The notes below the pieces were generated by a model. The model had not been told where the DNA came from and did no database searches. It saw only the letters and a program-made list of their open reading frames with translations. Source: Saccostrea echinata (taxonomy: Eukaryota). From it: a DNA stretch of 64,000 nt. The stretch is from positions 35,216,001 through 35,280,000 of the forward strand of contig NW_026889778.1 of the NCBI RefSeq assembly GCF_033153115.1, written 5' to 3'. The position numbers and the translations under genes were made by a program. Shown here one piece after another: positions 52,001 through 55,000 of this stretch (position 1 is the first letter of the stretch; each line of letters opens with the position of its first letter).

Positions 52001-55000
52001 ATTAATACTTAACTTTTCAAAACTTGTTTATGATGTATTTGATTTATAAATATGTTACAAAAGTAAAAAAAAAAAGTTTTTCCTGTCTTAGCTGATAAAT
52101 AACTACAATGTAAACTGAAGCGTAACTATTTCATAGAAAAATTGAAAATCATGCACACACTTTTTGGAGGAATAAATTTCAAGTTGGGGTAACTGGAAGA
52201 TGGGTAGACTGCATATGAACACCAAGATACTGAATGACTACTAAGCGATATGATAGTCAATCATTGCACAAAATTTGATTTTTCAATGGAATTTTCTGTT
52301 GCCACCTCACGGACCATTATCGGTAATCACCAACTTCATATATGTGCAGTAACGGTGCGCAGTGCACGTCGGGAAATTGGTTTTCGTGCAAGAAGGTCAT
52401 TTAAAGGTCTTGTCATGACACCAAGACATTTGTCAATCCAACTTTTATTTTGGAAAAGATGGCATAAAGTATATACCAGTAACGATCAATTCACAAACGA
52501 GAATAACATGTGGTGCAATAGTAATTTTGTCTAGTGTATTTCGCAGATACCTATATTGCACAAGTATATTCGTACAAAGTAAGTAGTCATGCATTATTTA
52601 TACTTACTTTTGAAAGATCTCGAATATGAATGTGTAACGTTTAGGCGAATGGATAAAACTGCCAACGTAAATTCAAGACGAATAATGACCCCCGTAGAAT
52701 GATAATCCGGGGTAACTTTTCGGCCCCCAACAGTATAAAAAATGTGTTTATTTTGGATAAAAAATCCAAGGGTCAGTTTTCTACATGTATCACCAAAAAG
52801 AATATGATCACTTTGAAAAACTACCTCTATCCAAATTGCCTAAGGGATGTATGTTTGGAAAGGGGTGAGTGATGCCAAGATTGGCAAGCAGTTTTCGAGA
52901 TACGGGTTACAGTCCTATTTATTTTTCTGACGAACTCTTATGGAGCAACATCTTCACATTCATCCCATGAACAAAATTAACGCAAACTAAAATGATTGAA
53001 GAAATATTTAATCATTTGAAAATGTCATTACTTCATCTAATGCACTTAACAGTTTTTAAGAAGATCTCTTCATATAATAAATATAAATGATATTTTCAAT
53101 TCTGAATTGATACACACATGAATTCAATTGTTGATAGTCAATAGCATCAATTGCAAGAATTGTTGGGCGAAATATTTGAATTGTTGCTCTCTCCAATGGA
53201 ATTGGTGATACCTTCAATTGAATTGATTGGTGCAATAATTCAATTGAAGAAAGCAATTACTTAATTAATTCTCCCAATAATGGAATCAACAATATCATCA
53301 AATGATTACTGATTTCATCAATCCTTTTAGTTTATGTTTGTGTGGAGCAACATTACTGCAATTGTCGGAATTCGAAATGAAATAAAATGATAGTTATCTG
53401 ACTTGTCTTAGAGTCATATTTATCTTGTGTAGCAGTAAACTGAACTTGTATTATCATATTCACTCAATATGTTTTTACAGTACATAGCCGTAGCCCCTAG
53501 GGTGTTAATTTACTTAATCTTAAAAATAGATTTGGTAAGTTCGCTATCTCTGCACCTCGTGTACGTGACCACATCATGTTTAATTTAGAACTTTTAGACA
53601 TACCCAAAGGAAATGGACACATTTAATGGAAACTAAAAACTGGTCAATTTCTACAGGGATAAGTCTTCCTCATGAAGAGTGTGCAGATTTTAAGGGTGAT
53701 GACGCATTTTCGACAAACCCCGAGTCTTCTTATTCTACGTAGATTATTGACGTTCAAAAATGACCACCTTGATTATCCTACTGAAGATCTAGAGTTATAA
53801 TTTTTGCATGTCTCTGAGTTTCTAACGATCAAAAGTTTTCTTTTTTCAATAATATTCATATTTGAGCTAATTTTGAAAACGATGATGTCAGGTTCACACT
53901 TCCATAATATGGTTAGGAATACAAGGACTTGATAATCTTTGTTGTGGAATGAAATAAAAGACGTCTTAATCGTATAGCGGTTTATTTGAGACTTGTTGTT
54001 ATCTATAGAAACGTAACGTAAAGTATTATGATGTCACAACAAAGTTAACCTTACATAAGCTCGCGGATAATCCATGACACTCCGGGCACCAAAATGAATA
54101 GTGAAATTTAAAGTTCATATAACTAACAGTTCCAGTGAAATAAAAAGCAAGTTCATAATCACTAAATTAAGAGGCCCGGATCCATTCATGGATTCTTTCT
54201 TTGGCTTTTGTTTGTGATACTCAGTCCTCTTCTGTTCAGACTCGTTATATTTCAGGTTTTGTTTCACAGTCTCAGTTTCCGAGTGTTTGTCACCTAATTT
54301 TGTGTTAGCTTTCTCCAGCTCCATGTTCCGAGTATGTCGGTTGTTATTTTGTTTCTTTATCTCTGCCCTGCCACTAAGATTCTTTTTCTGTGACTCATCT
54401 TTTTCCTTCTCCTCGGCCTCTTTAAGTTTTTCTATTAGCTGAGTTTTCTCCCTTAGTGCATAATTACGAGTCTTTACAGCGAACGTGTAATCTCTCTTCC
54501 TGCTATCCACGGAGCCCTGTAAAGTTTGCAGCTGATTTTCCAATCTCTGTACATCTATCTTCAGATCGCTTATTTCCCTTTGAGCGTAATCATATCGTGA
54601 CTGAAGACTGCTGGTTTTAGCCTTGACGTGCTCCGAGTCAGAGCTGGCGGTGTTGAGTATGTCAACTTGACCCCTTAATTCCTGAATCTCCTTATGCAGA
54701 CGTCCGTTTTCGTATGCCAGTTTACTTTTCTGTTCCATCATTTCCTTCATCACATTCTCTACACGAGTCTGAAAATCCTTTTGTTGGTCGAATTGTGACA
54801 CTCTCTCTAACAGGGTGGTATTCTCCTGCTCCAGTGCGTTCCTCCTTTGTGTCTGGATCTTCAGCTCTGATTTTAATTTTTGTATCTCGTTAGTCAACTT
54901 GTTACGTTCTTCTTGCATGAAGTCCACGGTCCGACTTATCGGAGAGATAGGCCTAGCTGTATTCAGTAAAACACTAGTAGGTCGATGTTCAACGTTCAGT

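What the first reader, a model, noticed from the sequence alone, without database searches (positions are those of the whole stretch)
54200..54954. BEL/Pao element that replaced pol with a captured host coiled-coil (CCDC150-like) segment, fused in frame to gag
Seen: after the gag zinc knuckles and the VLLNTA motif, where the protease should begin, the same frame continues into about 200 aa of heptad-rich sequence with no introns, and no protease, RT or integrase follows before the 3' LTR. Recall and inference: the motifs [11 protein letters not shown] and [11 protein letters not shown] resemble CCDC150, implying mRNA capture by template switching. The LTRs and TSD are intact, so the chimera may have transposed as a unit. 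This points to a possible gene-transducing mini-LTR family.
Basis: partly seen in the sequence, partly recalled or inferred. Interest (0 to 1): 0.85.

Follow-up and report, generated by a model that had tools for sequence, protein, structure and literature searches.

The report
Oyster retrotransposon carrying captured CCDC150 fragment
A small jumping gene in the black-lip rock oyster lost its enzyme genes, picked up a spliced piece of the host gene CCDC150 fused to its capsid gene, and copied itself to at least 23 places, a clean invertebrate example of the gene capture known from tumour retroviruses.

Summary
The observation and the reading both hold. On the minus strand, window 56766..53940 is a 2.8-kb BEL/Pao LTR element: 140-bp LTRs, 5-bp target duplication AAGAT, gag but no pol. 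After the zinc knuckles and VLLNTA, gag runs in frame into about 730 nt (54953..54223) derived from the host CCDC150 mRNA.

- **Source gene.** The intron-bearing gene is on another contig (G000:C54, 18 exons). The cargo holds exons 8, 9 and 10, the end of exon 12 and part of exon 13. Three introns are removed exactly, and there is one internal deletion.
- **Junctions.** The 3' junction sits in an 11-nt microhomology. The 5' junction falls on the first base of exon 8, where autonomous relatives carry a splice-donor-like GTGAGT.
- **Spread.** At least 23 copies share the 5' junction, and all 21 aligned copies share all three. Seven complete copies each have their own duplication, and LTR pairs differ by 0-2.9%. 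Only about 6 close autonomous copies exist.
- **Host.** The genome is Saccostrea echinata. S. cucullata has the same chimera.
- **Selection.** Within the family the cargo evolves neutrally and only its frame stays open, so it looks like a passenger.

Another window of this scan flagged the same family (s1-812198). This is a known mechanism in a new group.

The parts
56767..56771 (-). 5' target-site duplication AAGAT
   Evidence: Read from the sequence. The same 5 nt follow the 3' LTR.
56627..56766 (-). Outer 5' LTR, 140 bp, TG..CA
   Evidence: Direct repeat, 97% identical to the 3' LTR; 4 differences in 140.
56612..56626 (-). 15-nt linker between the tandem LTRs. It matches, with one mismatch, the 15 nt that precede the 3' LTR and begins like the PBS.
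   Evidence: Sequence read. Only this copy has the extra LTR.
56482..56611 (-). Second, inner 5' LTR copy, 130 bp with a 10-nt deletion
   Evidence: 83% to the reference LTR when aligned without gaps.
56461..56478 (-). Putative primer-binding site starting TGG, directly after the LTR
   Evidence: Position and sequence. The tRNA partner was not identified.
54956..56440 (-). gag, with a DUF1759 domain and CCHC-type zinc knuckles. About 96% nt identical to the gag of autonomous copies. Broken in this copy by indels at 56373-56355, ~56268 and ~55643, with a 21-nt deletion at ~55227.
   Evidence: Pfam PF03564, E 2e-26; collinear with autonomous L052 and L054; lesions.
54939..54953 (-). 15 nt at the 5' junction with no detectable source, ending in CCG like the autonomous copies just before their GTGAGT. 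Probably diverged element sequence.
   Evidence: The S. cucullata chimeras have a 3-residue version at this spot.
54778..54938 (-). Cargo: CCDC150 exon 8, from its second base
   Evidence: 84.6% identical to G000:C54:65137126-65137287; the host intron before it ends in AG.
54586..54777 (-). Cargo: CCDC150 exon 9, exact exon 8|9 join
   Evidence: 89% identity; host GT..AG intron of about 225 nt is absent.
54398..54585 (-). Cargo: CCDC150 exon 10, exact exon 9|10 join. It ends in an internal deletion junction (about 54409-54398) at a GAARGAAAA-type microhomology. The deletion removes the end of exon 10, all of exon 11 and most of exon 12.
   Evidence: The junction is shared by all 21 aligned copies.
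54361..54397 (-). Cargo: last ~50 nt of CCDC150 exon 12, overlapping the deletion microhomology
   Evidence: 80% match to L056 4420-4469; sequence comparison.
54227..54360 (-). Cargo: first ~135 nt of CCDC150 exon 13, exact exon 12|13 join (GCAGAG|ATAAAG)
   Evidence: 81% identity to G000:C54:65140663-65140834.
54216..54226 (-). 3' junction: 11 nt shared by host exon 13 and the pol 3' end of autonomous copies (GATCGAGTATC in most copies; two substitutions in this one)
   Evidence: Three-way comparison; all copies.
54080..54215 (-). Retained 3' internal end of the parent element: the last pol codons read in another frame as a ~35-aa tail (stop at 54117..54115), the 3' UTR and the pre-LTR motif
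   Evidence: 91% identical to autonomous L052 and L054; frame comparison.
53940..54079 (-). 3' LTR, 140 bp
53935..53939 (-). 3' target-site duplication AAGAT

Best explanation
This is one decayed copy of a non-autonomous BEL/Pao LTR retrotransposon family of Saccostrea echinata, formed once by retroviral-type transduction of a host mRNA. A spliced CCDC150 transcript (exons 8-10, the end of exon 12, part of exon 13) replaced almost all of pol, from the start of the protease to 16 codons before the pol stop. It stands in frame behind gag. What was kept is what is needed in cis: LTRs, PBS, gag and the last ~140 nt before the 3' LTR. Protease, RT and integrase must come in trans from the few autonomous copies (inferred). 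Shown here: the host origin, exact intron loss, the single origin, and repeated integrase-type insertion with 5-bp duplications. Inferred: the 3' junction and the internal deletion arose by reverse-transcriptase template switching at microhomologies. The 5' junction arose either by splicing from a cryptic donor (GTGAGT) in the element onto exon 8, or by a second switch at the near-identical GGTRAGTCA. The cargo now behaves as a passenger: its residues drift neutrally while the reading frame stays open. The gag backbone has been exchanged with co-resident autonomous elements.
For: Element anatomy and TSD. Break points against autonomous copies that carry Peptidase_A17, RVT_1, rve and DUF5641. 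Cargo is CCDC150: phmmer over 1.8 billion proteins gives C. gigas CCDC150 at 1.5e-78, 51% identity, residues 443-672 of 1059, followed by CCDC150 of other phyla. Parent gene: 18 exon matches to CCDC150 at G000:C54:65127786-65145924, on a contig whose length equals that of the S. echinata contig holding XP_061197585. Exact exon joins 8|9, 9|10 and 12|13, and host GT..AG introns absent. The 11-nt microhomology at the 3' junction. Single origin: identical three junctions in 21 aligned copies, and 23 hits to the 5' junction word against 3 for the control. Transposition as a unit: 7 of 7 complete copies have different 5-bp TSDs and LTR pairs 0-2.9% apart. A protein tree puts the cargo clade as sister to Saccostrea CCDC150 (99/96), inside the oysters. 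Passenger status: differences among copies fall evenly on codon positions (52/51/50) against 7/9/32 for fixed differences to the host gene. Shared versus singleton N/S is 56/25 vs 96/39 in cargo (p 0.76), against 49/43 vs 141/56 in gag (p 0.003). Open frame kept: 0 of 81 shared variants are stops, 3.9 expected, P 0.017. Eight of 21 copies keep a ~775-aa gag-cargo ORF. Backbone exchange: Gag of S. echinata chimeras is 92-95% identical to S. echinata autonomous copies but 80-84% to S. cucullata chimeras, which share the same 5' junction and deletion join.
Against: No RNA or small-RNA data could be obtained, so present activity and expression are unknown. The window copy itself is dead. The 15 nt at the 5' junction match neither the host locus (17 kb upstream searched with up to 3 mismatches) nor any extant autonomous copy. 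Trans-mobilisation by the autonomous copies is inferred from shared LTRs and gag and was not shown. A simple equal-rate model predicts about 21 fixed third-position differences between cargo and host gene against 32 seen (p about 0.015). So early constraint on the cargo, or a donor gene from a related Saccostrea lineage, is not excluded. The S. cucullata comparison rests on RefSeq protein models only; no DNA was available.
Confidence: 0.9

Rival explanations
1. The cargo is not a passenger. On this view the Gag-CCDC150 fusion protein is selected at the level of the element, for example as an added multimerisation module that helps it enter or take over particles of the autonomous partner, or by interfering with host CCDC150.
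For: The fusion is in frame in all copies. No stop codon occurs among 81 shared cargo variants (3.9 expected, P 0.017), and most cargo indels are multiples of 3. Fixed differences to the host gene are strongly third-position biased (7/9/32), and NG86 omega against the host exons is 0.10-0.16. Chimeras outnumber autonomous copies by at least 23 to about 6. The chimera persists in two Saccostrea species.
Against: Within the family, cargo changes are spread evenly over codon positions (52/51/50). Shared variants are as non-synonymous as singletons (p 0.76), while gag in the same copies shows constraint (p 0.003). Cargo protein diverges 2.3-2.8 times faster than Gag within and between species. The low NG86 omega is inflated by a 2:1 transition bias in a sequence rich in two-fold codons, and half of that path is the constrained host gene. 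The homodimer prediction gave no verdict.
Confidence: 0.2
2. The capture happened in another Saccostrea lineage and the chimeric family reached S. echinata by horizontal transfer or introgression. That would explain why the cargo differs from the resident CCDC150 mainly at synonymous sites.
For: There is an excess of third-position fixed differences over an own-lineage neutral model (32 seen against about 21 expected; and own calculation). The chimera is present in S. cucullata as well. At the five residues where the two species' CCDC150 differ, the cargo agrees with S. echinata at 3 and with S. cucullata at 2, of which only one is a derived state shared with S. cucullata.
Against: Divergence of cargo (61% aa) and Gag (83% aa) between the two species' families fits vertical descent from a common ancestor at about 0.1 neutral substitutions per site. 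The excess is only marginally significant. The cargo shares more derived residues with the S. echinata gene than with the S. cucullata gene.
Confidence: 0.15
3. The chimera was made at the DNA level, for example an element landing in or beside a LINE-made processed CCDC150 retrocopy followed by microhomology-mediated deletions, rather than by template switching inside a particle.
For: Microhomology at junctions is also the mark of DNA end joining. Intron loss needs only some mRNA intermediate.
Against: No free processed CCDC150 retrocopy was found in the genome: every intron-less match lies inside a chimeric element. The 5' junction coincides to the base with an exon start and with a GTGAGT in the parent element, which DNA deletion would not predict. 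The orientation and reading frame are those of a co-linear RNA.
Confidence: 0.07
4. The direction is reversed or the similarity is fortuitous: the coiled coil is native to the element, and the 'host gene' is a domesticated or unrelated coiled coil.
For: Coiled coils give spurious low-level similarity; Pfam shows only sub-threshold coiled-coil hits.
Against: Nucleotide identity to the host exons is 81-89%. CCDC150 orthologs of about 1000-1100 aa exist from molluscs to vertebrates and align at the same residues. The cargo is nested within the Saccostrea branch. Autonomous elements lack the segment.
Confidence: 0.01

Closest known systems
Acutely transforming retroviruses with gag-onc fusions (classical oncogene transduction; own knowledge, mechanism reviewed in refs 18-19 of PMC4299795)
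   Same: Spliced host mRNA lies inside the LTRs, fused in frame to gag. Replicative genes are lost, so the element depends on a helper. The 3' junction is at a short homology, as expected from a template switch between co-packaged RNAs. The 5' junction is compatible with read-through plus splicing.
   Different: This is an intracellular BEL/Pao retrotransposon of a mollusc with no env. The cargo is a fragment (about 22%) of a structural coiled-coil protein with no sign of a selected function. The chimera is fixed in the germ line at 23 or more copies.
Maize Bs1 LTR retroelement (Jin & Bennetzen 1994; Elrouby & Bureau 2001, 2010; summarised in PMC13317346)
   Same: A non-autonomous LTR element in which transduced, intron-less host gene fragments form a hybrid ORF with gag-region sequence.
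   Different: Bs1 is a plant element with three cargo genes and a low copy number (the copy number is from my own knowledge). Here there is a single cargo, an animal BEL/Pao backbone, and the non-autonomous form outnumbers its partner.
Crocodilian endogenous retroviruses that captured KIT-ligand and nectin3 mRNAs (PMC4299795)
   Same: Host mRNA captured by an endogenous retroelement, multiplied in the germ line and shared by related species. Nectin3 was captured at the expense of a viral gene.
   Different: Those cargos are complete ORFs under purifying selection and form separate genes. Here a partial ORF is fused to gag and drifts neutrally.
Non-autonomous LTR elements without coding capacity (LARD and TRIM, including the bivalve TRIMs of PMC6934838)
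   Same: Short LTRs and dependence on an autonomous partner.
   Different: This family keeps a full gag that is under purifying selection, and carries host coding sequence.

Membership tests
BEL/Pao LTR retrotransposon | Direct LTRs ending TG..CA, flanked by a short target-site duplication | tested here: met
   140-bp LTRs with 4 differences and a 5-bp AAGAT duplication. Six other complete copies each have their own 5-bp duplication.
BEL/Pao LTR retrotransposon | Gag of the Pao type (DUF1759) with zinc knuckles | tested here: met
   PF03564, E 2e-26. Knuckles are seen in the translation; two are damaged in this copy.
BEL/Pao LTR retrotransposon | Pol with Pao protease (Peptidase_A17), RT, RNase H and integrase | tested here: not met
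   Absent from this element. Present in relatives with about 96% identical gag and LTRs. The element is therefore a non-autonomous derivative and cannot move on its own.
BEL/Pao LTR retrotransposon | tRNA primer-binding site next to the 5' LTR and a polypurine tract before the 3' LTR | tested here: inconclusive
   A TGG-initiated 18-mer follows the LTR after 3 nt, but no tRNA partner was sought. The pre-3'LTR motif is only weakly purine-rich.
Retroelement-transduced host gene (retroviral-type transduction) | Cargo is homologous to a host gene that lies elsewhere with introns | tested here: met
   G000:C54:65127786-65145924, 18 exon matches. The cargo matches exons 8-10, 12 and 13 at 80-89% nt identity.
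Retroelement-transduced host gene (retroviral-type transduction) | Introns removed exactly at exon borders | tested here: met
   Joins 8|9, 9|10 and 12|13 are exact at GT..AG introns.
Retroelement-transduced host gene (retroviral-type transduction) | Cargo moves with the element: several copies with the same junctions and different insertion sites | tested here: met
   21 aligned copies share all three junctions. 23 copies match the 5' junction word. 7 of 7 complete copies have distinct TSDs.
Retroelement-transduced host gene (retroviral-type transduction) | Junctions at short homologies between element and host RNA | tested here: met
   11 nt at the 3' junction. 9 of 10 nt (GGTRAGTCA) at the 5' junction if the 15 unexplained nt are element sequence. 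A-rich microhomology at the internal deletion.
CCDC150 protein family (cargo only) | Significant, collinear sequence similarity to CCDC150 orthologs | tested here: met
   E 1.5e-78 to C. gigas CCDC150; hits named CCDC150 in molluscs, brachiopod, lancelet, echinoderm and vertebrates.
CCDC150 protein family (cargo only) | Full-length protein of about 1000-1100 residues | tested here: not met
   Only about 240 residues (roughly 445-780 of the ortholog, with a gap) are present. It is a fragment of the gene. The intact gene is at C54.
TRIM / LARD non-coding non-autonomous LTR elements | No protein-coding capacity between the LTRs | tested here: not met
   Eight of 21 copies keep a ~775-aa gag-cargo ORF, and gag shows purifying selection.

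The most novel reading that the evidence does not exclude
The Gag-CCDC150 fusion is more than a frozen accident. On this reading it is an element-level adaptation: the borrowed coiled coil (or the need to keep translating to the 3' end) helps the pol-less element out-compete its autonomous partner. The cargo module survives by repeatedly recombining onto fresh autonomous backbones and may have moved between Saccostrea species. That would make it a stable, modular parasite of a parasite built from a host gene.
Probability: 0.2. Interest if true: 0.75.

Novelty: new member of a known kind. Interest (0 to 1): 0.6.

Why it matters
Capture of host mRNA by LTR retroelements is the textbook origin of retroviral oncogenes, but clean germ-line examples in animals are few. 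I found none for BEL/Pao elements or molluscs in the searchable literature.

This family preserves all the junctions, the donor gene, the autonomous partner, more than 20 dated copies and a sister family in a second species. It could therefore serve as a natural record of several things:
- how transduction happens (splice or template switch at the 5' end, microhomology at the 3' end);
- how a non-autonomous element co-evolves with its helper through recombination;
- how fast a captured coding sequence decays once freed from host selection.

It also has a practical side. RefSeq lists these chimeras as ordinary 'uncharacterized protein' genes in two oyster genomes.

Tried and rejected
- **DNA from other oysters.** No branch-specific codon test was possible.
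- **More copies.** Only 7 chimeric copies are complete at both ends, and the more distant autonomous lineages (80% identity) could not be read.
- **Source of the 15 nt at the 5' junction.** No match within 17 kb upstream in the host locus with up to 3 mismatches. No element in the genome has these 15 nt followed by GTRAGT.
- **Homodimer prediction for cargo residues 1-185.** No verdict (score 0.26, mark 0.32). This is not evidence either way.
- **NG86 omega of 0.10-0.16 between cargo and host exons.** I first read this as strong selection on the cargo and then rejected that reading. The estimate is biased by a 2:1 transition excess in a sequence rich in two-fold codons. Half the path is the host gene. 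Within-family data show neutrality.
- **First gag selection tables.** They used the frame of the window copy, which is frameshifted. They were redone in the frame of an intact copy.
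Full report
**1. What is at the site**

The feature lies on the minus strand. A 140-bp direct repeat (TG..CA) occurs at window 56766..56627 and at 54079..53940, with 4 differences in 140. Both ends are flanked by AAGAT.

The 5' end of this copy has an extra, slightly deleted LTR (56611..56482). It is joined to the first by a 15-nt linker.

Between the LTRs there is a TGG-initiated primer-binding-like site and then a gag reading frame starting at 56440. 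Its DUF1759 domain scores E 2e-26.

After the zinc knuckles and the motif VLLNTA, the same frame continues for about 280 more codons to a stop at 54117..54115. That stretch gives only sub-threshold Pfam hits to coiled-coil families. No protease, RT or integrase is present.

One addition: this copy's gag is broken. It has a 19-nt duplication at 56373..56355, deletions of 5 nt (~56268) and 1 nt (~55643), and a 21-nt in-frame deletion that removes part of a knuckle (~55227).

**2. Which part is foreign**

The same genome holds longer relatives of 5.8 and 7.0 kb. They have the same LTRs and about 96% identical gag. They encode Peptidase_A17, RVT_1, integrase and DUF5641, so they are BEL/Pao elements.

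The window element is collinear with them from the LTR to window ~54955, and again from 54222 to the 3' LTR. The segment between, 54953..54223, has no counterpart in them.

**3. Where the foreign part comes from**

A phmmer search of the 244-residue translation against 1.8 billion representatives gave 54 hits.
- The best is Crassostrea gigas CCDC150 (E 1.5e-78, residues 443-672 of 1059).
- Next come a Mytilus protein and proteins named CCDC150 or CCDC150-like from lancelet, Lingula, a sea star, a shark and a frog.

In the window's own genome the cargo DNA matches one locus in separated blocks of 81-89% identity: G000:C54:65137126-65140834. That locus is a full CCDC150 gene. C. gigas CCDC150 aligns to it in 18 pieces over 18 kb.

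The contig length (69,717,260) equals that of the contig carrying Saccostrea echinata XP_061197585, "CCDC150-like". The genome is therefore S. echinata.

**4. The cargo is spliced**

- exon 8 from its second base;
- exon 9 and exon 10;
- the last ~50 nt of exon 12;
- the first ~135-170 nt of exon 13.

The joins 8|9, 9|10 and 12|13 fall exactly where the host has GT..AG introns of about 225, 230 and 170 nt.

Between exon 10 and exon 12 there is a deletion that does not use splice sites. It sits in an A-rich microhomology (GAARGAAAA) and removes the end of exon 10, all of exon 11 and most of exon 12, keeping the frame.

**5. The junctions with the element**

*3' junction.* Host exon 13 and the pol 3' end of the autonomous copies share GATCGAGTATC, and the chimera crosses from one to the other inside these 11 nt. 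After the junction the ORF reads the old pol end in a different frame. This gives a ~35-residue tail with a hydrophobic end.

*5' junction.* The last bases shared with autonomous copies (…ACAGCTA) are followed by 15 nt of unknown source that end in CCG. Host exon 8 then begins at its second base.
- I found no source for the 15 nt in 17 kb of upstream host sequence or elsewhere in the genome.
- The autonomous copies read …CCG|GTGAGTCA at this spot, and the host mRNA reads …GAG|GTAAGTCA across the exon 7|8 border.
- The S. cucullata chimeras have a shorter, three-residue version that also ends in proline before the cargo.
- The 15 nt are thus probably diverged element sequence.

The junction then lies exactly at a splice-donor-like GTGAGT of the element and at the first base of a host exon. 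Two routes give the same product and cannot be told apart here:
- splicing of a read-through transcript from an element inserted upstream of exon 8;
- a second template switch at the 9-of-10 microhomology.

**6. One capture, many transpositions**

The cargo DNA has 20 further full-length matches (86-93% in BLAST alignments that count gaps; copies are 94-98% identical to one another over ungapped columns) on many contigs.
- All 21 aligned copies have the same 5' junction, deletion join and 3' junction.
- Seven copies could be read end to end. Each has its own 5-bp duplication (AAGAT, AATAT, ACCAT, ATATC, GTAAA, ATTTT, GATAT). Their LTR pairs differ by 0 to 4 positions.
- Eight of 21 copies keep an uninterrupted gag-cargo frame of about 775 codons.
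- Only about six close autonomous copies were found with the pol side of the junction.

**7. Age and spread**

In a protein tree the cargo clade is sister to Saccostrea CCDC150 (support 99/96), inside the oyster clade and apart from Crassostrea and Ostrea. So the gene was taken within the Saccostrea lineage.

RefSeq of S. cucullata lists at least four "uncharacterized" proteins of 710-748 residues that are the same chimera. They have the same 5' junction and the same exon 10/12 join. Their 3' part differs: exon 13 is read in another frame and more pol sequence is retained.

| Comparison between the two species' families | Amino-acid identity |
|---|---|
| Gag | 83% |
| Cargo | 61% |

Within S. 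echinata, Gag of the chimeras is as close to the autonomous copies (92-95%) as the chimeras are to each other. Both are 80-84% from the S. cucullata chimeras. Since the capture was single, the gag backbone must have been exchanged with co-resident autonomous elements after the lineages separated. This is an inference, and it rests on protein models for S. cucullata.

**8. Is the cargo selected?**

A pairwise NG86 comparison of cargo and host exons 8-10 gives dS 0.53-0.74, dN 0.07-0.09 and omega 0.10-0.16. I do not take this at face value, for two reasons:
- transitions outnumber transversions 2:1 in a sequence dominated by two-fold codons, which inflates NG86 dS;
- half of the path is the constrained host gene.

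Codon-position counts are clearer.

| Class of difference | Position 1 | Position 2 | Position 3 |
|---|---|---|---|
| Fixed in all copies against the host gene | 7 | 9 | 32 |
| Variable among copies | 52 | 51 | 50 |

Counts of shared and singleton variants among copies:

| Region | Shared variants N/S | Singletons N/S | Fisher p |
|---|---|---|---|
| Cargo | 56/25 | 96/39 | 0.76 |
| Gag | 49/43 | 141/56 | 0.003 |

So inside the family gag is under purifying selection and the cargo residues are not.

The frame, however, tends to stay open. None of 81 shared cargo variants is a stop (3.9 expected, P 0.017), and most indels are multiples of three.

A simple equal-rate model predicts about 21 fixed third-position differences where 32 are seen (p about 0.015, my calculation). 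Some early constraint, or a slightly diverged donor, is therefore not excluded.

A homodimer prediction for the cargo gave no verdict.

**9. Comparison with what is known**

The architecture and inferred origin are those of retroviral transduction: a gag-host fusion, loss of pol, helper dependence, and a microhomology at the 3' junction.

The closest non-viral cases are:
- maize Bs1, an LTR element with transduced host gene fragments forming a hybrid ORF (PMC13317346);
- crocodilian endogenous retroviruses that captured KIT-ligand and nectin3 mRNAs (PMC4299795).

Full-text searches found no report for BEL/Pao elements, oysters or CCDC150. I therefore class it as a new member of a known kind. 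Another window of this scan flagged a copy of the same family (s1-812198).

**10. Limits**

Noticed in passing
window 56766-56482: This copy starts with two LTRs in tandem (140 bp, then 130 bp with a 10-nt deletion) joined by 15 nt. Those 15 nt match, with one mismatch, the 15 nt that precede the 3' LTR and begin like the PBS (TTTTGGTGCC is common to the PBS and the pre-3'LTR motif). A recombination or strand-transfer slip between these two motifs would produce it. The other six complete chimeras have a single 5' LTR. Also noted by the first stage (s1-820382).
   Followed up: partly
L055 (G000:C51:6154500-6158500): A piece spanning the gag-cargo junction (element positions 1682-1989) is repeated three times in tandem with a period of about 474 nt, next to a longer partial copy. 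This may be the start of a satellite made from the chimera.
   Followed up: no
L053 (G000:C20:1048000-1055600): A chimeric copy with its own TSD (GATAT) carries a ~3.8-kb insertion just after the PBS region. The inserted sequence was not identified.
   Followed up: no
window 54215-54115: After the 3' junction the chimeric ORF reads the last pol codons and the 3' UTR of the parent element in a different frame. This gives a ~35-residue tail ending in a hydrophobic stretch that is present in all intact copies.
   Followed up: partly
Proteins P0128, P0150-P0152 (S. cucullata) and P0022 (S. echinata): RefSeq annotates copies of this retroelement chimera as ordinary 'uncharacterized protein LOC…' genes in two oyster genomes. 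The S. cucullata models share the 5' junction and deletion join but have a different 3' junction that retains more pol sequence.
   Followed up: partly
G000, genome-wide: Non-autonomous chimeras (at least 23) outnumber close autonomous partners (about 6). Four more distant relatives at about 80% identity exist (C34, C53, C3, C30) but could not be read.
   Followed up: no
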